From positions 1 through 11,407 of IMG/VR virus record IMGVR_UViG_3300020567_000318: a DNA stretch of 11,407 nt. The stretch is one strand, 5' to 3'. The position numbers and the translations under genes were made by a program. The notes below the pieces were generated by a model. That model did not search any database, was not told the origin of the DNA, and saw only the letters and a program-made list of their open reading frames with translations. Shown here in pieces: positions 2,405 through 11,407 of this stretch (within the stretch, counting starts at the first letter, position 1; each line of letters begins with the position of its first letter).

Positions 2405-2761
2405 ATGCCGATAACAAAGACGTTGCAGGACCGATTCGAGAAGTTCAGCGCGAAGACGCCCCCCGATGTCACCGGGGCTAGGTACGCCGCTAGCAAGGAG
2501 ATAGCGCTACCCAGGTTCCTGGAGGGGTCCAGCGCGATGGCCGTGATAGTGGAGCTGACTAGGAACATATTGGAAACGGCGGGCGTCCCCGCCGGGCAGC
2601 AGGGAGTTTACTACGGGTTCGCGCAGAGGGCCAGGAAGCTGGCATGGAGCCACAGCGGTGAAACGCTGGCCAAGTTCATCGAGGGGCTGAAGTCAGAGTA
2701 CGTCGCCAAGGGCTGCGACCCGGCCATCCTCGACAAGATCGCTGCGCTAGTAGTTGGTTAG
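2405..2761 (+). CDS. Major capsid protein 1, SIRV2-type (Adnaviria)
   Basis: The N-terminal DRFEKFSAK and the C-terminal ILETAGVPAGQQGVYYGFAQR...GETLAKFIEGLKSEYVAKGCDPAILDKIAALVVG follow the SIRV2 MCP pattern as recalled (QRYAKWQAKF ... YQGFG ... INGLKGYY ... NPQVLD). Clear paralogue of the next gene. Confidence 0.88.
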   Translation: MPITKTLQDRFEKFSAKTPPDVTGARYAASKEIALPRFLEGSSAMAVIVELTRNILETAGVPAGQQGVYYGFAQRARKLAWSHSGETLAKFIEGLKSEYVAKGCDPAILDKIAALVVG

Positions 2762-2775
2762 GGGTGGGATAGGGC

Positions 2776-3156
2776 ATGCCGATCGTTAAGTCCCGGGTAT
2801 CGGACCGGTACGCCAAGTACAACCTAAAGTACCCCGATGCCACCACGATGACTAGCAGGCTGACCGCGGTCAAGGAGATAATGGACCTGCGCTACCAGGC
2901 CGGCTCCTCCGTGATCTACAACGCCGTCGAGGCAACCAGGAACATCTTGGAGTCTAAGGGCGTCCCCGTCGGGCTCCATGGTGCCTACTATGCCTTTGCC
3001 CAAGAGCTGGTGCGGGCGACTTTTAGTCATAGTGGCGCCACCCTCAATGCGATTATCAGCGGTCTAAAGCAGAAGTATGTGACCGCGCACGGCCTGGATG
3101 CGACTATCCTGGACGAGATAGTCAAGACCGTGGTTGGCGTCCTCCCGCCCTACTAG
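2776..3156 (+). CDS. Major capsid protein 2, SIRV2-type (Adnaviria)
   Basis: DRYAKYNLKY...TRNILESKGVPVGLHGAYYAFAQ...SHSGATLNAIISGLKQKYVTAHGLDATILDEIVKTVVG aligns end to end with MCP1. SD-like GGGGTG in the 14-nt spacer. Confidence 0.88.
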   Translation: MPIVKSRVSDRYAKYNLKYPDATTMTSRLTAVKEIMDLRYQAGSSVIYNAVEATRNILESKGVPVGLHGAYYAFAQELVRATFSHSGATLNAIISGLKQKYVTAHGLDATILDEIVKTVVGVLPPY

Positions 3157-3223: not shown

Positions 3224-4267
3224 GTGAGGGTAGCCATCTGCACATCCGATAGATCCGTATCGCTACAGATTGTCGCTAGGGATGTAGCAGAGGTCCTGAG
3301 GTCCCGGGGCCACCTGGTGGACGTCCACCTCTTCGCATTGACAGACCCCAGCATCTACAAGAGGTACGACTCGTGGTTGACGGTCATGACGTTTGACGTG
3401 GTCTGGGCGACCCCGTACTTCTTTGTCGCAAGGTCCGCGAAGGTGCGCGGCCTGCGCTCGCTGTTTTACGCAACTATCGAAGGTAAGGTCTGGGGGCTGT
3501 GGATGCGCGAGTGGATAGTCCGAGACCTGGAGTTTATCGCGTGTAGCAATTACGTCAAGAGGAAGATTGCCGAGGTGGGTGGCAAGGTTGTAGCGGTGGT
3601 GTACCACGGCATAAAGCCAGAGGAGTACGAGGCGGCCAGGACCCTGGGAGCCTCGTTGAGGCGCAGGCTAGGGTTCACGGACAAGGACTTCGTGGTGGCA
3701 TACGTTGCAGCGGACTACCCGAGAAAAGGACATGATCTATTCGCAGAGGTCTGTAGGATCGTGGCGCAGAGGGACCCCAGCATCAAGTTCATCATCGCCA
3801 CTAAGGATGATGCGATCTCACACTACGCTGGGTGCAACAACGTCGTAGCGCTTGACTGGTTCGGGAAGGTCCCCCGCACGGACATTCTAGCGGTCTATGG
3901 GGCGTGCGACCTCTACGCCCAGGCCAGCCTAGCTGAGGGCTTCGGCTTGCCAGTGCTGGAGGCGCTAGCGAGTGGTAAGCCCGTTGTGCACGCGGACTAC
4001 GAACCGCTGAGCGAGATAACGACGCCAGAGACATCCTTCCGCGTCCCCGTCAGGGCGGTCATCGACTACAGAGACACGGGCCCCACAATGGGTGGCATCA
4101 TGTACGAGCACCACATCTACGACCCCTCCGAGTTCGCAGACGTCATCATCCAGGCCAAGGAGGAGGTGGTGTGCAGGAGGGGGGAGCTGGAGGAACTCTG
4201 CAAGCAGAGAGCTAAGGAGTTTGACGCTAGGAAGACCTACTCGGCGTTCGAGGTGCTCTTGCAATGA
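3224..4267 (+). CDS. Glycosyltransferase, GT-B fold, family 4 (Glycos_transf_1)
   Basis: VVYHGI, PRKGHD and the EX7E motif EGFGLPVLEALASGKPVV. Such enzymes are common in rudiviruses and lipothrixviruses. Confidence 0.93.
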   Translation: MRVAICTSDRSVSLQIVARDVAEVLRSRGHLVDVHLFALTDPSIYKRYDSWLTVMTFDVVWATPYFFVARSAKVRGLRSLFYATIEGKVWGLWMREWIVRDLEFIACSNYVKRKIAEVGGKVVAVVYHGIKPEEYEAARTLGASLRRRLGFTDKDFVVAYVAADYPRKGHDLFAEVCRIVAQRDPSIKFIIATKDDAISHYAGCNNVVALDWFGKVPRTDILAVYGACDLYAQASLAEGFGLPVLEALASGKPVVHADYEPLSEITTPETSFRVPVRAVIDYRDTGPTMGGIMYEHHIYDPSEFADVIIQAKEEVVCRRGELEELCKQRAKEFDARKTYSAFEVLLQ

Positions 4268-4992: not shown

Positions 4993-7900
4993 ATGGAGGG
5001 GATGGACTGGGATGCGATCACGCCAGAGGATGCGCAGTACATCATCTCGATGCTCGACAGACTAAGAGATGTCGAGATCGGCTCAACGATACCAACCATC
5101 AGCATCGGTGAGCTGGACCTCGATGCGCTCGCCAGCTCTCTGGCTGGCATCACTGACCCCATAGGCCAGATTCAGAGCTGGTTCCAGGACCAACTGAGGG
5201 CTCTCACGTCGTGGTTCAGCAGCGCGGTCGACAGCCTGTTCCGATCGCTCTACAACACGCTCATCAAGCCAACATTGAGCGCAATAGCTGGTGGCGTCGA
5301 CTGGATCAGGAGCAACCTTCAGTCGATCGCGAGCACCGTAACATCATCGCTGGGCCAGATCGCCACGCTCGTGAGCAACCTGGGGTCCTCCATCGCTTCC
5401 ATATTGAGCGCGATAGCGCAACTTCCCTCCGCGATATGGAACCAGTTGCAGAGCGTATCCAGCGCGATAATCAGCAGCCTGTCCAGCGCCATCGCGTCCG
5501 TGGTCGCGAAGGTTTCGGATGCGCTGGGCGGGCTTAGGAGCTGGCTCTCCAGTGCGCTCTCCAACGTGATCAGCGGCATCGCGGGCCTGGCATCTACCAT
5601 ATCCGGAGCCATATCTCAGATAACGGGCGCGATTTCGAGTGCAATGGACGCGGTGGTGAAGGCGATAACGCAAATACCTGGCGTTGTGTCCGCCCTCATA
5701 TCAAGGCTACAGGAGTGGATAGGGGGGGCGTTCGCGGGGTTGCAGAAGTGGGTGGGAGAGAGGCTGGAGGGCATACTTGACGCGCTGGGCAGGGCGCTCG
5801 CGACGCTGTCTGACGCTCTGAGGGGCTTGCAGTCGTGGCTAGCCGCCACCTTGGCCGGTGTCGTATCCGGGTTGCGGGACCTGCTGTCCAGCTCTTTATC
5901 TGCAATCGGTAACTGGATAGCCGAGGCCACGAAGCGCTTGCAGGACATCGGGTACGTGTTCCAGGGGTTCGTGAACGCCATACTGAGGGTACCGGAGATG
6001 CTGGGGAGCATACTGGCCAACATATTCAAGCCAGTGGTGGACTTCCTGGGTTCTATAGCTCAGGCGATACTGAACTTCTTTGCCGATCCCGTTGGTACGC
6101 TACGAAGGGCGTTCGAGTGGCTGGCGAAACAGATCTGGGACCTGCTACCTAGCTGGCTCAAGGATGCGATTATCGCGTTGCAGAACGCCTGGAACAGCTT
6201 TGTTCAAGGGCTACAGGACTTCCTAAGGGATCCCTTGGGCTTCATCCAGCGTGGCTTCAGCTGGCTGGCGGAGCAAATCTGGAAGCTGTTACCAGATTGG
6301 CTCAAGGGAGCGATCGTTGCAATACAGAACGCTTGGAACACATTCGTTCAAGGGCTCCAGGACTTCATCAAGGACCCCATAGGCTTCATACGCGCGAGGT
6401 TTGAGGAGCTGGCGAAATGGATCTGGGAGCACCTGCCAGAGCCAGCGAAACAACTCATAGAGAAGATCCGCGATTGGATTTTGGGCGCGTGGGACTTCCT
6501 GTACAAGCTGTTCACCAAGTACCTGCCAGAGGCGATAGGGTGGGCGTGGAACGAGTTGCAGAGGTTCATAGCCAACCCGCTGAACTACATATGGGAAAAG
6601 CTACTGGGGCTGTGGGAGTGGATATCCAAGCAGCTCGCAGGCGTGTGGAACGTGCTAAGGGGCGCCTGGGACTGGTTCGTGGGGGCGTTGCGTGGCGCGT
6701 GGGACTGGCTCGTGTCAGCTGTCAGCGCGATCCCGCAGGTGATACTCACATCTCTGCGCGTGCTGGGAGAGACGGTCTTGAACCTGGCCAAGAGCGTTGG
6801 TGAGGCGCTCGCTGGCGTGTTCGGCGCTATCGTGAGGGAGGTGGCGAAGCCCTTCCAGCCACTGGTCGAGGTCGTTGGGCAGTACATGATGCAGGTGCTG
6901 GGGCCACTGGCGCCCAAAGAGCGGGCGCCACTCTTCGTGGACACCATGGTACGCTCGGGCACGGCGCTGATGGTGACGTCGCTCTACGCAGCTGGCATAG
7001 CGACCATACCGCTCATGCTCACGAAGGCAACTAAGGCTGGCGGTCACGCCGTCAAGTCGCTCCTGGAGCGGATCGGCATAGACCTGGACGGCCACCTGCA
7101 ACTCCTGATGGACGTTGGCCTAAGTGGGACTAAGGTTGGCGGGAGGGGAGGGGGTGGCGCCAGGTTCAGCATATCATCGAAGTTGGTGTCAGCGCTGGGG
7201 GAGGCGATAAACGAGCTTGGAGACGCCTTCGACAAGTACGCATCGAGCATACTACAATATGCGGTTCTCTGGACCACGGAGCCCCTGGGCTCGGCCATAG
7301 GCCGCTACTCAGCATACTTCATACGCGACCTCATCCCGGTTGAGCTACCGGGGCTCGATCAGCTGGTGGATTTCGCCAGGAGGGTCAAGGGGGTAGATAA
7401 GCCAGAGGAGTACCTGAAGGCGCTCAACTACTACGTGTCGCTTTACGGCTACTCGACGTATTTCGTGGAGCAGGTATTCGGCTTCACGCTGAATGAGGAG
7501 AAGATACCGGTCATAGAGATCCGCGACAGGTTCTACGATGTGAGCAGGGCGGTGAGGAAGGTCCCCATAGCGCTCATCTACGAGCTACCGAGCGCGTCTG
7601 ATGTGGCCGCGATGATGGTGCGCGACATCTTCTACTCGTACGATGACTTCATCAAGCTGGCGAGGGCCAGGGGCATGCCAGAGGACATCGCTGCGCTCTA
7701 CTACATCTACAGGTTCAAGTACCCGTCACCCGAGCAGCTCTTCGAGTTCTACTGGCGCGGTGTGTCTGGCGTCCTCTGGTACGCACCCAGGCAGCTGATG
7801 ACCGATGAGGAGAGGTCCACGCTGCTGGAGAGGCTGAAGGTGGGTGCCGAGCCCAGGCCACCGGCGGCGCTGAACTTCGACATCTCAACGCTCTCTGACA

Positions 7901-9909
7901 TGATAGGAACCTACATGAAGTGGCACGACCTGTTCCCAGCAGCTTGGGAGGCTGGCTTCACGAGCGACAGGGCGATAGTCATGGACCTAGCGGCGGAGAT
8001 GCCCGATAAGATAGATGTGCGCTGGATGCTCCGCTACGCAATCTTCGAGCTACTGGCAAGCAAGGGCATAACGCGCGAGACGCCCGTACCGCAGCTGAGG
8101 AACGTGCTGGAGGACGCGGCAACGAACAAGGAGGTCCTCATGGACCTGTCGATGGTGTGCAGGTTGCTACAGGCCCGGGGCCTGCACCCATACTTCGTGC
8201 CGTTCATAGCTGTCGCGGACACGCTAGCTGCGCTGGCGGATGAGCGCACGCTAGTGCGCTCGGGCTTCATAAACCTCTACGAGCGGGGCGCCCTGGACGT
8301 GAAGACGCTCGACAAGCTGCTCTCCAACCTAGTTGTAGCGTCGTTCAAGGTGTCATACTTCGACATAGAGCGGGGCACGTGGGTCGACAACAAGTACGTG
8401 AACGTCCCGGTGGCCTACCTGCCAGCAGAGCGCAAGCTGATAGAGTTGCGCGCACTGCTCGACAAGTTCGAGAGGCCATGGCGCGAGGTGTGGAGCGACC
8501 TGGAGACCGCGTACAGGGAGTACATCTTGGACGCAAGCTCAGCCATGATGGCCGCAACGGCGGTCGCCAAGGCGATCAATGAGTTGCTACCAGAGGAGTC
8601 CAAGGCGCTAGTGGGCACGGAGTACAAGCTCACCGTTGATGAGGACTACCTGAAGACACTGCTAAAGTCGTGGGAGGTTGCTAGAGAGGTCTACACGATA
8701 CGGAGGATTAGGTCCTGGGTCTACCGTGTTTTGGGCTGGCTGATATACAGAGTGGCTTACGGGTACGTTAGGCCCAGCGACCTGGACTCCCTAGCCAGCA
8801 CATTATCTGAGGTAGCCAGGCTACCGCAAGCGGAGAGGGAGGCGATCGCTACAATCACCAAGGCGGTGTGGCGGATCGCAACGAGGGAGTACATACCCAC
8901 GCCATCGCAGCTGGCCACGATAGCCGAGGTCGTGCCAGCCGCGCTCAAGTACGTGGATGACGTGCTGGAGGCTCTGAACGTGCCAGAGGAGTGGAGGCCA
9001 ATATGGAGGTCCTACATCACAGTGAAGCCAATAGCGGATGAGGTGAGGACGCTGGTGAGCTACTACTACCGCGCGAAGAGGTACGGCGTAACGTTGCCGG
9101 ATGATGTGGTCAAGGCCGTCGAGGCGCTCATGAGCGAGGTGGGGTACACGGACAGGGAGAAGGCGATACTGGACCTCGCGGCGTACATATACAACGTAAC
9201 GGAGGAGATGAGAAAGGAGGCGAGCGAGGTCATACCGTCGCTCTCCATGCTGGCATCGATGGCGGAGTACATCGACGTCCCGCTCGACTACGTGGCGAAG
9301 GTCATGGCAGCGAGGCGGGTCGAGAGGACGTACGCTGAGCTGTGGCTGAAGTACGTGTCAGCGAGAACGATAGCGAGCGAGGTCAACCGCGTCTCAAACA
9401 CGCTACGTAGCCTGTACGAGCACTTCGCTGTGCCCGATGACGTGGTCAAGGCGGTTGCGGATCTGATGAAACGGGGCGGGTGGACATCGAGGGAGCTTGC
9501 GATATTCCAGTTCGACCTGGAGCTGAGGAGGAGGTACCGCATCCTCAACACGCTGGTGCCAACCCTGCGGCAGTTTGTCACAGATGCCCTGTACTTAGGC
9601 GAGTGGGAGAGGCTACTGGAGGACTGGCTAGCAGCGAGAGGCATCGAAGCCGAAAAGTACAAGCAACAAGTAGAGTACTACAAGAAGCTGATAAAGTCCC
9701 GCAAGCTCAACAGGCGCCTGTCCTGGTTCATCGCGCGCCTGATGAACGCGTACTGCGCTGGCATCATTACCTTGGATGAAGCGAGAAAGCGACTGGAGCA
9801 GTTCAAGGACTACGGCTTGGATGATGATGAGATAAAGATCCTCCTTGCTGGCTTCGAGCTGGAGAGGGCGTACAGGCAAGCAGTGTACGGCAGAGGGGGA
9901 GGCGCGTAG
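4993..9909 (+). CDS. Very large minor structural protein (1638 aa): tape-measure-like amphipathic N-terminal part and helical repeat C-terminal part, candidate terminal/tail structure component
   Basis: Uninterrupted ORF. The first ~630 aa are amphipathic Ala/Ser/Ile/Trp helices, and a P-[ST]-x-x-[QDM]-[LV] motif recurs in the C-terminal part. Size and position resemble the large minor virion proteins of Ligamenvirales (for example SIRV2 P1070). The function is inferred. Confidence 0.75.
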   Translation: MEGMDWDAITPEDAQYIISMLDRLRDVEIGSTIPTISIGELDLDALASSLAGITDPIGQIQSWFQDQLRALTSWFSSAVDSLFRSLYNTLIKPTLSAIAGGVDWIRSNLQSIASTVTSSLGQIATLVSNLGSSIASILSAIAQLPSAIWNQLQSVSSAIISSLSSAIASVVAKVSDALGGLRSWLSSALSNVISGIAGLASTISGAISQITGAISSAMDAVVKAITQIPGVVSALISRLQEWIGGAFAGLQKWVGERLEGILDALGRALATLSDALRGLQSWLAATLAGVVSGLRDLLSSSLSAIGNWIAEATKRLQDIGYVFQGFVNAILRVPEMLGSILANIFKPVVDFLGSIAQAILNFFADPVGTLRRAFEWLAKQIWDLLPSWLKDAIIALQNAWNSFVQGLQDFLRDPLGFIQRGFSWLAEQIWKLLPDWLKGAIVAIQNAWNTFVQGLQDFIKDPIGFIRARFEELAKWIWEHLPEPAKQLIEKIRDWILGAWDFLYKLFTKYLPEAIGWAWNELQRFIANPLNYIWEKLLGLWEWISKQLAGVWNVLRGAWDWFVGALRGAWDWLVSAVSAIPQVILTSLRVLGETVLNLAKSVGEALAGVFGAIVREVAKPFQPLVEVVGQYMMQVLGPLAPKERAPLFVDTMVRSGTALMVTSLYAAGIATIPLMLTKATKAGGHAVKSLLERIGIDLDGHLQLLMDVGLSGTKVGGRGGGGARFSISSKLVSALGEAINELGDAFDKYASSILQYAVLWTTEPLGSAIGRYSAYFIRDLIPVELPGLDQLVDFARRVKGVDKPEEYLKALNYYVSLYGYSTYFVEQVFGFTLNEEKIPVIEIRDRFYDVSRAVRKVPIALIYELPSASDVAAMMVRDIFYSYDDFIKLARARGMPEDIAALYYIYRFKYPSPEQLFEFYWRGVSGVLWYAPRQLMTDEERSTLLERLKVGAEPRPPAALNFDISTLSDMIGTYMKWHDLFPAAWEAGFTSDRAIVMDLAAEMPDKIDVRWMLRYAIFELLASKGITRETPVPQLRNVLEDAATNKEVLMDLSMVCRLLQARGLHPYFVPFIAVADTLAALADERTLVRSGFINLYERGALDVKTLDKLLSNLVVASFKVSYFDIERGTWVDNKYVNVPVAYLPAERKLIELRALLDKFERPWREVWSDLETAYREYILDASSAMMAATAVAKAINELLPEESKALVGTEYKLTVDEDYLKTLLKSWEVAREVYTIRRIRSWVYRVLGWLIYRVAYGYVRPSDLDSLASTLSEVARLPQAEREAIATITKAVWRIATREYIPTPSQLATIAEVVPAALKYVDDVLEALNVPEEWRPIWRSYITVKPIADEVRTLVSYYYRAKRYGVTLPDDVVKAVEALMSEVGYTDREKAILDLAAYIYNVTEEMRKEASEVIPSLSMLASMAEYIDVPLDYVAKVMAARRVERTYAELWLKYVSARTIASEVNRVSNTLRSLYEHFAVPDDVVKAVADLMKRGGWTSRELAIFQFDLELRRRYRILNTLVPTLRQFVTDALYLGEWERLLEDWLAARGIEAEKYKQQVEYYKKLIKSRKLNRRLSWFIARLMNAYCAGIITLDEARKRLEQFKDYGLDDDEIKILLAGFELERAYRQAVYGRGGGA
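6076..6450 (+). repeat. In-frame tandem repeat, 144 bp (48 aa) unit, about 2.6 copies
   Basis: Units start at 6076, 6220 and 6364: FFADPVGTLRRAFEWLAKQIWDLLPSWLKDAIIALQNAWNSFVQGLQD / FLRDPLGFIQRGFSWLAEQIWKLLPDWLKGAIVAIQNAWNTFVQGLQD / FIKDPIGFIRARFEELAKWIWEHLPE. Confidence 0.9.
8890..9890 (+). repeat. Three degenerate ~110-aa protein repeats
   Basis: Units start YIPTPSQL (8890), VIPSLSML (9229) and LVPTLRQF (9553). PDDVVKAV recurs exactly at 9097 and 9433, 336 bp apart. Confidence 0.75.
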
Positions 9910-9929: not shown

Positions 9930-9961
9930 CTGATCTCTAGATGGATGGAGTGGGTAGGGAT

Positions 9962-10189
9962 ATGGCCAGAAGGCCCCCCTCCGCCGCAACCAAAACGTCC
10001 CCGGGCAGGTCCCCTACTGGCATGAGCAGCCCCGATGAGGAGCTTAAGAGCGCCATCCAGCAACTTCAGGATGCAATCAAGAAGTTCCAGGAGGACGTGG
10101 AGAAGGCCAGGAAGGTGCTAGAGGCGGAGTTCGCGAAGTGGAGCGCGCCCCAGGCATCGCCCCAGGCATCCAAGCAGGCGTCTAAGTAG
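9962..10189 (+). CDS. Small coiled-coil protein (start could be 9941, 9962 or 10022)
   Basis: Heptad pattern LKSAIQQLQDAIKKFQEDVEKARKVLE with low-complexity ends. Its stop is 3 nt before the next ATG. Confidence 0.7.
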   Translation: MARRPPSAATKTSPGRSPTGMSSPDEELKSAIQQLQDAIKKFQEDVEKARKVLEAEFAKWSAPQASPQASKQASK

Positions 10190-10192
10190 GCT

Positions 10193-11407
10193 ATGGGCTA
10201 CGCACAAAGAGAGGTAGCAAAGGTAGTAGAGCAGAAGCTGAAGTATTGGCTGAAGACGCAGAGCGAGGACGCGATAGACGCGATGTTCGACCGCATGTTC
10301 GACACCTACGATCGCCTCTCGTTCTGGGGGGACTGGGTGCTCTCGGACACACTCTTCTCATCCCTCATCTCGCTGGCGTTCTTCGACTTGCCAATACCGG
10401 AGATCGTGCCGTGGAGCCTGGTGTGGGAGGTGGAGTTGCCATCTATCGATGAGTTCCTCGCTGGCGTCCTCATCAAGCTGGAGCCCATCGACGTGACGGC
10501 GGTCTTCCCCGAGCTATCGGAGGTCCTCAGCTCCCTCAAGCTCCTCCTGACCAGCGAGTACGCACAGAACATACAGGAAACCAGGGTTAGGAAGCTGATT
10601 GTTGGCGAGAGCTACTACGGTGATAGCTACGTGGACCCGCCAGCGGTCAGGGAGTTCCTGCGCTCGACGCTCTACGCGTTCACGAAGAAAGACCTGACGT
10701 GGCAGGCGGTAAGGGATAGGTTGCGCGTGGCCGCGAAGACGTGGAACGTCCACGAGAGGCTCGTTGAGGACGCGTTCAACAGGCTCTCGATGATATCGGC
10801 AGTAAAGGAGCGGGCGCTGACGTGGGACTACGGCTGGTGGGACCGTAGCTATTGGGCGGAGGAGGGCAGCGGTGGCGAGGTCGCTTTCATCAATTACGAG
10901 GGTCAGGAGGTCAAGGCGGAGTACGAGCACCTAGCGGATCCGCAGTTTGGAGGTTACTGGGACATGAGCTACTGGGACATGTTCTACTGGGCCGCGCCCG
11001 AATCCCCGTACAAGCCAGCGGTTGGCCTTGAGGACCCAACCGTATCGAAGGTGCGCGACTTCGTAGTGCAGAACTTCAGGAGCAGGATACACGTAACACC
11101 ACTAGCTGTGGCTAACTACCAGACAGCGGAGGGCAGGACATCGTGGAGCGAGTCGCCACGCACGGAGACCTACGCAATTCCCTTGTCCATGCGGTACAGG
11201 ATCGAGTCGCTGGTCGACAGCATGGTCAAGCAGCTGAAGCCCGATGTTGGCGTCTTCCAGCTCAGGTTGTACAAAACTGCCGTGCTGGACCTGTTCGGCT
11301 CGCTTTACTCCCCCCACAGGTGGGGGGAGGAGGCCCTGCGCGCGTCATCCAAGGAGGAGCTGAGGAGCTTCTGGATCGAGAAGTGGAAGGCTCAGGGCCT
11401 GGATGAA
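10193..11407 (+). CDS. Probable minor virion protein with aromatic repeats and a C-terminal MCP-like segment, runs off the right edge of the window
   Basis: Manual translation gives 405 codons with no stop: MGYAQREVAKVVEQKLKYWLKTQSEDAIDAMFDRMFD...GESYYGDSYVDPPAVREFLRST...WDYGWWDRSYW...GGYWDMSYWDMFYW...FWIEKWKAQGLDE. Not in the track. It follows the giant gene, as the ~560-aa structural gene does in rudiviruses (recalled). Confidence 0.85.
   Translation, partial: MGYAQREVAKVVEQKLKYWLKTQSEDAIDAMFDRMFDTYDRLSFWGDWVLSDTLFSSLISLAFFDLPIPEIVPWSLVWEVELPSIDEFLAGVLIKLEPIDVTAVFPELSEVLSSLKLLLTSEYAQNIQETRVRKLIVGESYYGDSYVDPPAVREFLRSTLYAFTKKDLTWQAVRDRLRVAAKTWNVHERLVEDAFNRLSMISAVKERALTWDYGWWDRSYWAEEGSGGEVAFINYEGQEVKAEYEHLADPQFGGYWDMSYWDMFYWAAPESPYKPAVGLEDPTVSKVRDFVVQNFRSRIHVTPLAVANYQTAEGRTSWSESPRTETYAIPLSMRYRIESLVDSMVKQLKPDVGVFQLRLYKTAVLDLFGSLYSPHRWGEEALRASSKEELRSFWIEKWKAQGLDE

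What the first reader, a model, noticed from the sequence alone, without database searches (positions are those of the whole stretch)
11201..11407. Possible third capsid-fold domain at the C-terminus of the unannotated minor protein
Seen: IESLVDSMVKQLKPDVGVFQLRLYKTAVLDLFGSLYS...EELRSFWIEKWKAQGLDE parallels the MCP2 helical bundle VEATRNILESKGVPVGLHGAYYAFAQELVRATFS...LNAIISGLKQKYVTAHGLDA, including the V-x6-Y helix and the K-[WY]-x-x-x(x)-GLD turn. Inference: an MCP-derived domain could dock this protein at the end of the capsid helix as a cap or adaptor for terminal fibres.
Basis: inference. Interest (0 to 1): 0.75.

Follow-up and report, generated by a model that had tools for sequence, protein, structure and literature searches.

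The report
Capsid-like domain in virion minor protein
The last, cut-off gene of this archaeal rod-shaped virus contig encodes a conserved minor virion protein whose helical tail end looks like a diverged copy of the virus's own coat protein, an idea already published in 2026 for its rudivirus relatives.

Summary
The quoted peptide is really encoded at 11201-11407 (+). It is the end of a 405-codon ORF (10193-11407) that is cut by the contig end. More than 60 homologues are about 441 aa long, so about 37 residues are missing.

Pairwise BLASTP against MCP1 and MCP2 finds nothing. It beats reversed profiles, all 400 block-shuffled profiles and 40 other families, and conserved residues coincide.

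Structure comparison does not confirm it. The AlphaFold2 domain model is confident (pLDDT 92) but matches no solved MCP. Its only MCP hit is a predicted lipothrixvirus MCP at TM 0.41-0.44, not significant.

The protein belongs to the rudiviral minor structural protein family (SRV1 ORF464, SIRV1 ORF510 = Q8QL30, SIRV2 Gp33). The evidence is hhalign probability 95.5% and a top Foldseek hit with TM 0.61. A 2026 paper already calls that family an MCP-like minor structural protein.

This is a new member of a known kind. The cap or adaptor role remains inference.

The parts
10193..11407 (+). Minor structural protein gene (rudiviral ORF464/ORF510/Gp33 family), 405 codons, cut by the contig end; about 37 codons missing
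   Evidence: Open frame from ATG 10193 to the last base. 64 homologues of about 441 aa, the best 67% identical. hhalign against the rudiviral family A2: probability 95.5%, E 1.4e-8, 213 columns.
10193..11161 (+). N-terminal ~320 residues of the minor protein: mixed alpha/beta region with conserved motifs (LSDTLFSSL, DPxAVREFLR, TWDYGWWD), no known fold
   Evidence: Conserved columns in A1. AF2 model of homologue P0001: pLDDT 90.6. No Pfam hit. No Foldseek PDB hit at E<=0.001. No segment of it matches the MCP profile.
11162..11407 (+). C-terminal helical domain (first 82 of ~119 residues present): helix A 11165-11236, loop KPDVG 11237-11251, helix B 11252-11308, loop with HRWG 11309-11329, short helix 11330-11344, helix C 11351-11389, G-L-D turn 11396-11404. 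Helix D and the basic tail lie beyond the contig end.
   Evidence: Helix limits were transferred from the AF2 domain model of the 82%-identical L002 copy (pLDDT 91.7), using the gap-free alignment. Alignment to MCP residues 45-125.
2776..3156 (+).
   Evidence: Pfam PF12193 Sulf_coat_C, E 2.1e-12. tblastn to rudiviral coat proteins. Profile A4 hits PDB 6wq0, 3j9x and 3f2e.
2405..2761 (+). MCP1 (118 aa), paralogue of MCP2
   Evidence: Pfam PF12193, E 2e-10.
4993..9909 (+). 1638-aa homologue of the rudiviral tail-fibre protein ORF1070/P1070, encoded just upstream of the minor protein
   Evidence: phrog_7334, E 2.5e-30, residues 1298-1515; SIRV1 ORF1070 matches the same phrog. ORF1070 is described as the tail-fibre protein in PMC7911016.
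9941..10189 (+). 82-aa ORF between the fibre gene and the minor protein gene; function unknown
   Evidence: ORF list. Only weak sub-threshold Pfam hits. A small ORF also sits at this position in L002.
3224..4267 (+). Group-1 glycosyltransferase following the MCP genes, part of the conserved structural module
   Evidence: Pfam PF00534, E 9.4e-21. Conserved gene order in related loci.

Best explanation
Shown: the ORF 10193-11407 is a 3'-truncated copy of a conserved adnaviral minor structural protein. This is the family of SRV1 ORF464, SIRV1 ORF510 (Q8QL30) and SIRV2 Gp33.

Probable: its last ~100-120 residues form a separate helical domain that is most likely a diverged copy of the four-helix C-terminal bundle of the SIRV2-type major capsid protein. 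That domain is followed by an arginine/lysine-rich terminal helix.

Inferred: the MCP-like bundle lets the protein occupy or abut an MCP position at the ends of the MCP/A-DNA helix. The basic tail may contact DNA. The ~320-residue N-terminal part forms part of the terminal plug or an adaptor for the P1070-like fibre protein encoded next to it.
For: Family and length: 64 homologues of about 441 aa.

Homology to the rudiviral minor structural protein:
- phrog_7238 is hit by distant members, and that phrog is SRV1 ORF464.
- hhalign A1 against A2: probability 95.5%, E 1.4e-8.
- Domain-only profile A3 against the rudiviral C-terminal part: probability 91.9%.
- The top BFVD Foldseek hit of the domain model is SRV1 ORF464, probability 1.00, TMq 0.61.
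- SIRV1 ORF510 = Q8QL30 shares a 90% cluster with SIRV2 gp33 and a SIRV3 'virion protein'.
- Gp33 is a minor virion component (PMC5537682).

MCP likeness:
- MCP is the best non-self hit of the domain, and the reverse also holds, among 42 families.
- Independent sub-profiles give the same register.
- 0 of 400 block shuffles reach the real score.
- Only the C-terminal segment matches the MCP profile.

Context: the gene always lies in the structural module, next to the P1070 homologue or to MCP-GT. The tail is 36% K+R.
Against: - Foldseek with a confident domain model finds no solved MCP (3j9x, 6wq0, 3f2e, 5w7g and others) among the 50 PDB matches shown, and nothing at E<=0.001.
- The only MCP in the BFVD list ranks 21st, E 2.5, TM 0.41-0.44.
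- No member hits Pfam's MCP models, and pairwise BLASTP is empty.
- The rudiviral version of the domain shows no profile similarity to MCPs here.
- hhalign probabilities are moderate, and much of the score comes from the G-L-D-xx-L helix. A similar string occurs by chance in ribosomal protein uL18.
- Nothing here tests location in the virion.
Confidence: 0.6

Rival explanations
1. The protein is the rudiviral-type minor structural protein, but its C-terminal helical domain is unrelated to the MCP. The resemblance would be convergence or chance between small up-down helical bundles that share a G-L-D-xx-L helix cap.
For: No Foldseek support from solved MCPs. TM is only 0.41-0.44 to one predicted MCP. 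No Pfam MCP hit. The rudiviral homologues show no MCP signal. The profile truncated before the last helix scores at noise level. uL18 carries a similar motif.
Against: The real profile score exceeds all 400 block shuffles, which keep such motifs. It also exceeds all 40 other families. Three loops and the invariant Y, G-L-D and L columns coincide. Adding rudiviral MCPs raises the score. An independent published HHpred/AlphaFold3 analysis reaches the same view (PMC13700489).
Confidence: 0.3
2. The MCP-like domain is real, but the protein does not cap the ends as an adaptor for fibres. Instead it nucleates or terminates capsid assembly on the genome ends, or is scattered along the helix. In that case the basic tail would bind the terminal DNA.
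For: The conserved basic terminal helix (36% K+R). In the single-MCP clade the gene sits directly after MCP-GT and away from the fibre gene. The homologue is present in virions only in minor amounts (PMC5537682).
Against: No direct evidence either way. In the window's clade the gene is adjacent to the P1070-like fibre gene. Terminal structures of adnaviruses are said to be built of minor structural proteins (PMC12282232).
Confidence: 0.2

Closest known systems
Rudiviral minor structural protein family: SRV1 ORF464 (B6EFC8), SIRV1 ORF510 (Q8QL30), SIRV2 Gp33 (488 aa); phrog_7238. PMC13700489 calls it the 'MCP-like MSP'.
   Same: Homologous over the C-terminal ~60% (hhalign 95.5%), including the domain in question (91.9%; Foldseek TMq 0.61). 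Similar length. Encoded in the structural module of a virus with SIRV2-type MCPs and a P1070-type fibre protein.
   Different: Only about 19% identity in the profile alignment. The N-terminal ~180 residues do not align. The window's clade has a PD-x-D/P loop and an HRWG loop, which the rudiviral proteins lack. Both families continue beyond the aligned region with different C-terminal sequences. The viruses here have two MCPs, 40-66% GC, and are binned with Thermoprotei, Thermofilales and Desulfurococcales MAGs.
SIRV2-type adnaviral major capsid protein (Pfam PF12193 Sulf_coat_C; PDB 3J9X, 6WQ0, 3F2E)
   Same: Four main helices in the same order, with loops at the same alignment positions. Shared invariant Tyr in helix 2 and a G-[LA]-D-xx-[IV]L-[DE] start of helix 4. 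Profile-profile P about 1e-5.
   Different: The bundle sits at the end of a 441-aa protein, not after a ~45-residue DNA-wrapping arm. There is a ~9-residue insertion with a short extra helix between helices 2 and 3. Helix 4 continues into a 19-residue basic tail. Below Pfam threshold. Fold match not demonstrated.
Capping or vertex paralogues of major structural subunits (phage T4 gp24 versus gp23 is cited in PMC9894754; minor pilins and inovirus tip proteins are cited from general knowledge)
   Same: The principle that a diverged copy of the main building block terminates or specialises a lattice.
   Different: Analogy only. There is no sequence relation, and the location of this protein in the virion is untested.

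Membership tests
Rudiviral ORF464/ORF510/Gp33 minor structural protein family (phrog_7238) | Sequence homology to the family | tested here: met
   hhalign A1 against A2: probability 95.5%, E 1.4e-8, 213 columns. Distant members hit phrog_7238 at 1.1e-6. The window's closest relatives alone do not hit the phrog or tblastn.
Rudiviral ORF464/ORF510/Gp33 minor structural protein family (phrog_7238) | Shared fold of the C-terminal part | tested here: met
   The domain model's top BFVD hit is SRV1 ORF464 (B6EFC8): probability 1.00, TMq 0.61, rmsd 4.0 over 107 columns. Foldseek E is only 0.042.
Rudiviral ORF464/ORF510/Gp33 minor structural protein family (phrog_7238) | Encoded by a virus with SIRV2-type MCP, within the structural gene module | tested here: met
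   MCP1 and MCP2 match PF12193. P1070 homologue identified. Conserved gene order in 19 long loci.
Rudiviral ORF464/ORF510/Gp33 minor structural protein family (phrog_7238) | Physical presence in virions in minor amounts | not testable with these tools
   Known only for the rudiviral members (PMC5537682 for SIRV2 Gp33; SIRV3 'virion protein' label).
SIRV2-type adnaviral MCP fold (PF12193 / PF21660) | Match to the Pfam family models above threshold | tested here: not met
   None of 46 C-domain sequences hits PF12193, PF21660 or PF25647, even at E<=10. The full-length query also has no Pfam hit.
SIRV2-type adnaviral MCP fold (PF12193 / PF21660) | Profile-profile similarity to MCP families over the four-helix bundle | tested here: met
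   Probability 62.6-85.7%, P 7.3e-5 to 5.5e-6, about 80 columns. Reciprocal best among 42 families. 0 of 400 block shuffles reach the score. The strength is moderate, not decisive.
SIRV2-type adnaviral MCP fold (PF12193 / PF21660) | Four-helix bundle superposable on solved MCP C-terminal domains | tested here: inconclusive
   The AF2 model has four main helices plus one short helix. Foldseek PDB shows no MCP chain among the top 50 of 168 matches. BFVD lists one lipothrixvirus MCP at rank 21, TM 0.41-0.44.
SIRV2-type adnaviral MCP fold (PF12193 / PF21660) | N-terminal basic arm directly preceding the bundle, wrapping A-form DNA as a dimer | tested here: not met
   About 320 residues precede the bundle. 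A chimeric profile (residues 1-36 plus the C-domain) aligns end to end with MCP, but the score does not rise over controls. DNA wrapping is not testable here.

The most novel reading that the evidence does not exclude
The whole minor protein may be an MCP paralogue split by a ~290-residue insertion. Its first ~35 residues would correspond to the MCP's N-terminal DNA-binding arm, and its last ~110 to the bundle.

Natural deletion variants would restore an MCP-sized protein. P0184 (145 aa) and P0231 (125 aa) consist of the N-terminal 35 residues fused to the C-domain. P0184 at least is a free-standing gene.

These mini-proteins align with the MCP profile almost end to end (E 3.2e-4, 105 columns). 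They could be alternative capsid or capping subunits.
Probability: 0.15. Interest if true: 0.55.

Novelty: new member of a known kind. Interest (0 to 1): 0.35.

Why it matters
Outside the MCP, adnaviruses are said to share no universal core genes, and their terminal structures are described as genus-specific (PMC12282232). This work shows a Gp33-type minor protein with an MCP-like C-terminal domain in a large, uncultured two-MCP clade, in a related single-MCP clade, and in Rudiviridae. PMC13700489 reports it for ahmunviruses and baiyanviruses. That makes it a candidate second conserved structural gene of the class.

It also gives a concrete hypothesis for how the ends of the MCP/A-DNA helix are closed. 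The idea itself is already in print for the rudiviral homologues. What is added here:
- family membership of this clade;
- the position of the MCP-like part at the C-terminus;
- the basic tail;
- the mini-variants;
- a warning that fold-level support is still weak.

Tried and rejected
- Downstream DNA of the same contig: the window is the whole 11,407-bp IMG/VR contig. Megablast and tblastn of the window's ORF against phage records found nothing.
- BLASTP of the ORF against MCP1 and MCP2: nothing.
- Pfam and PHROGs on the window's clade members: no family.
- HMM of the C-domain against PDB sequences: only a chance uL18 match, E 0.8.
- Pfam scan of all 46 C-domains at E<=10: no MCP family.
- Foldseek of the full-length model against PDB: no hit at E<=0.001. 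Of the domain model against PDB: no MCP among the 50 shown.
- Rudiviral MSP (whole or C-domain) against MCP profiles: noise.
- Other segments of the protein against MCP: noise, so there is no second MCP-like domain.
- Chimeric profile to test the N-terminal arm idea: the alignment extends but the score does not rise.
- HMM search of 1.84 billion representatives with the C-domain: found only MSP-type proteins and fragments. No bona fide MCP came up as an intermediate apart from the two mini-variants, and those have no Pfam MCP hit.
- Searches for more mini-variants in the protein database, viral contigs and genome contigs: none.
- Antisense ORF 11102-11317: rejected as coding, because the + frame is conserved in over 60 homologues.

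Full report
WHAT IS THERE. The window is the complete IMG/VR contig IMGVR_UViG_3300020567_000318, 58% GC. It carries the structural module of an archaeal rod-shaped or filamentous virus of the realm Adnaviria:
- two paralogous SIRV2-type major capsid proteins: MCP1 at 2405-2761 and MCP2 at 2776-3156, both matching Pfam PF12193, with distant tblastn hits to rudiviral coat proteins;
- a glycosyltransferase at 3224-4267;
- two small ORFs;
- a 1638-aa homologue of the rudiviral tail-fibre protein ORF1070 at 4993-9909 (phrog_7334, E 2.5e-30);
- an 82-aa ORF;
- the ORF of the finding.

That ORF starts at ATG 10193 and is still open at the last base, giving 405 codons.

THE MISSING END. The protein has 64 database homologues, the best 67% identical, almost all 436-450 aa long. 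A further 80 metagenomic loci carry relatives. The window therefore lacks only about 37 residues.

In the closest full-length relative (P0001, syntenic 23.7-kb contig L002) the sequence after GLDE runs on for 37 residues and stops. It then carries a conserved R-x-R-F-L-R-x-R-L type tail. The last ~19 residues are 36% K+R, against 13% in the rest of the domain.

IS THE RESEMBLANCE TO THE MCP MORE THAN CHANCE? At the single-sequence level it is not. BLASTP gives nothing. A family profile truncated where the window ends scores at noise level against the MCP profile (score 16.2, P 0.04).

With full-length family profiles the picture changes. The C-terminal domain alignment (A3: 46 sequences, 119 residues) was compared with an alignment of 44 MCPs from the same loci (A4). 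Adding six rudiviral MCPs to the MCP profile raises this to probability 85.7%, P 5.5e-6, score 38.7.

Controls:
- Reversed profiles score 11.6-12.9, 60 column shuffles reach at most 17.4, and 60 block shuffles of A4 reach at most 27.0, against the real 31.9.
- 400 block shuffles of the enlarged MCP profile, which keep local motifs, reach at most 35.6; none reaches 38.7.
- Among 42 protein families built from all fetched loci, MCP is the best non-self hit of the domain (32.5 against 20.4). The minor protein is the best non-self hit of MCP (31.5 against 21.2).
- Sub-profiles of the two-MCP clade and of a more distant single-MCP clade each recover the same register against their own MCPs, P 1.2e-4 and 6.1e-5.
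- No other segment of the protein resembles the MCP.

Qualitatively, the three inter-helix loops coincide: KPDVG with GVPVG, the HRWG loop with SHSG, and G-L-D with G-[LA]-D. The invariant Tyr of the domain falls on the invariant Tyr71 of the MCPs. Its invariant G-L and the invariant Leu four residues further fall on the G-[LA]-D108 turn and on the nearly invariant L112.

I take this as moderate evidence of common origin. It is not proof, and much of the score sits in the last helix. A similar QGL[ED]xxxLE string occurs by chance in ribosomal protein uL18.

STRUCTURE. AlphaFold2 models are confident:
- Full-length P0001 with the 59-sequence alignment: pLDDT 90.6, pTM 0.87.
- The domain alone: pLDDT 91.7, pTM 0.83, with helices 2-25, 31-49, 57-61, 64-76 and 82-118.

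This gives four main helices in the order required by the alignment, plus a short extra helix in the insertion between helices 2 and 3.

Foldseek against the PDB finds nothing at E<=0.001, for either the whole protein or the domain. None of the solved MCPs appears among the 50 matches shown; profile A4 identifies these as 6wq0, 3j9x, 3f2e, 5w7g, 3fbz, 3fbl and 6d5f. Against predicted viral structures, the only MCP listed is the putative MCP of Sulfolobales Beppu filamentous virus 2, at rank 21, E 2.5, TM 0.41-0.44, rmsd 4.9 over 98 columns.

Foldseek is weak on small all-helical domains, and I had no access to coordinates for a direct TM-align. The fold criterion therefore stays inconclusive. 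No member reaches any Pfam MCP model.

WHAT THE PROTEIN IS. Several lines tie it to the rudiviral minor structural protein family:
- Distant members of the family hit phrog_7238 (E 1.1e-6). SRV1 gp22 (ORF464) matches that phrog at 5.9e-222.
- tblastn of a distant member finds only the ~466-aa ORF of Sulfolobus islandicus rod-shaped viruses.
- The profile of the window's family against a 21-sequence rudiviral alignment gives probability 95.5%, E 1.4e-8, over 213 columns that include the C-terminal domain. The domain alone gives 91.9%.
- The top BFVD structural match of the domain model is SRV1 ORF464: probability 1.00, TMq 0.61.
- SIRV1 ORF510 is Swiss-Prot Q8QL30. It shares a 90% cluster with SIRV2 gp33 (488 aa) and a SIRV3 'virion protein'.

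According to PMC5537682, Gp33 is part of SIRV2 virions in minor amounts. SMR1 shares 'three minor structural proteins' with other rudiviruses (PMC3569270).

Most relevant is PMC13700489 (Microbiome, July 2026). In my own comparisons, however, the rudiviral version of the domain shows no detectable profile similarity to MCPs. The signal comes from the window's clade and its single-MCP relatives.

HOW IT PROBABLY WORKS.
- Shown: homology to a known minor virion protein, a separate C-terminal helical domain, a conserved basic tail, and constant placement in the structural module. The gene order is MCP-MCP-GT-x-x-fibre-x-MSP in the window's clade and MCP-GT-MSP in the single-MCP clade.
- Probable: the domain derives from the MCP bundle.
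- Inferred: it uses MCP-like surfaces to join the last turn of the MCP/DNA helix. The N-terminal ~320 residues have no known fold and carry the conserved TWDYGWWD and DPxAVREFLR motifs. They would build part of the terminal plug or hold the P1070-type fibres, and the basic tail may touch the terminal DNA.

The ICTV profile says terminal structures are made of minor structural proteins (PMC12282232). Nothing here locates this protein in the virion. An assembly-nucleation or DNA-end role is equally compatible with the sequence data.

AN UNEXPECTED SIDE RESULT. An HMM search of 1.84 billion representative proteins with the domain found only this family and its fragments. Two small proteins stand out. 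P0184 (145 aa) is a free-standing gene with an AT-rich upstream region; P0231 is 125 aa.
- P0184 residues 1-38 match the first 37 residues of a full-length family member from the same sample (P0058, E 8e-4). Its residues 34-143 match that protein's residues 328-438 at 55% identity. They are internal-deletion derivatives: the N-terminus joined to the C-domain.
- P0231 also lacks the insertion between helices 2 and 3.
- Their two-sequence profile aligns with the MCP profile over 105 columns, almost end to end, including the MCP's N-terminal arm (E 3.2e-4, probability 38.8%).

This suggests the whole minor protein could be an MCP with a large insertion. A chimeric profile test shows the N-terminal arm adds alignment length but no score over controls, so I rate this as speculative.

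VERDICT. The MCP-derived reading is moderately supported by sequence profiles and by the literature, but not by fold search. The cap or adaptor role is untested. This is a new member, in a large uncultured clade binned with Thermoprotei, Thermofilales and Desulfurococcales MAGs, of a protein kind already described.

Noticed in passing
L095:612-1049 (P0184); P0231: Two small proteins (145 and 125 aa) consist of the first ~35 residues of the minor structural protein fused to its C-terminal domain. P0184 at least is a free-standing gene. P0231 also lacks the loop insertion and is MCP-sized. Their profile aligns almost end to end with MCPs (E 3.2e-4).
   Followed up: partly
window 4993-9909: The 1638-aa ORF is a homologue of the rudiviral tail-fibre protein ORF1070 in its C-terminal part (phrog_7334). 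Its Ala/Ser/Leu-rich N-terminal ~700 residues hit many phage tape-measure PHROGs, which may reflect repetitive helical sequence rather than homology.
   Followed up: partly
relatives of window 11162-11407; e.g. L002:11270-11326: The domain ends in a conserved ~19-residue tail that is 36% Arg+Lys (R-x-R-F-L-R-x-R-L type, or K-K-x-E-L-G-R-K-L-R-L-x-R-L-G in the single-MCP clade). It is predicted as a continuation of the last helix. This part is missing from the window.
   Followed up: partly
L068-L087 (e.g. L068:8251-11305): A more distant clade (28-33% identity) has a single MCP gene detected in the part fetched, with gene order MCP-GT-MSP. The fibre gene lies elsewhere or on the other strand. 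The minor protein is therefore conserved across both one-MCP and two-MCP viruses.
   Followed up: partly
L010:3951-5276 and L039:5636-7056: In two metagenomic relatives the minor protein gene is split into two ORFs. This could be a frameshift, a pseudogene or an assembly error.
   Followed up: no
L100 (JAPWTS010000004.1, 52.9-kb contig of a Thermofilales MAG, 66% GC): A homologue lies inside a contig about twice the size of the related viral contigs. This may be an integrated provirus or a binned viral contig, and could point to the host.
   Followed up: no
cluster of SIRV1 ORF510: Near-identical copies of the SIRV minor structural protein are deposited under Streptomyces gamaensis, Aquimarina litoralis and Microbacterium sediminicola. 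This most likely reflects contamination of bacterial assemblies with rudivirus DNA.
   Followed up: no
window 9941-10189: An 82-aa ORF lies between the fibre gene and the minor protein gene. A small ORF also sits at this position in L002 (59 aa), and a small-ORF family (f13) is found there in L040. No family was assigned.
   Followed up: no
L002:11331-12491: The gene that follows the minor protein in complete relatives is beyond the window's end. It encodes a 386-aa protein that hits phrog_5335 (E 3e-11) and phrog_7221, both of unknown function, and is followed by a second glycosyltransferase.
   Followed up: no
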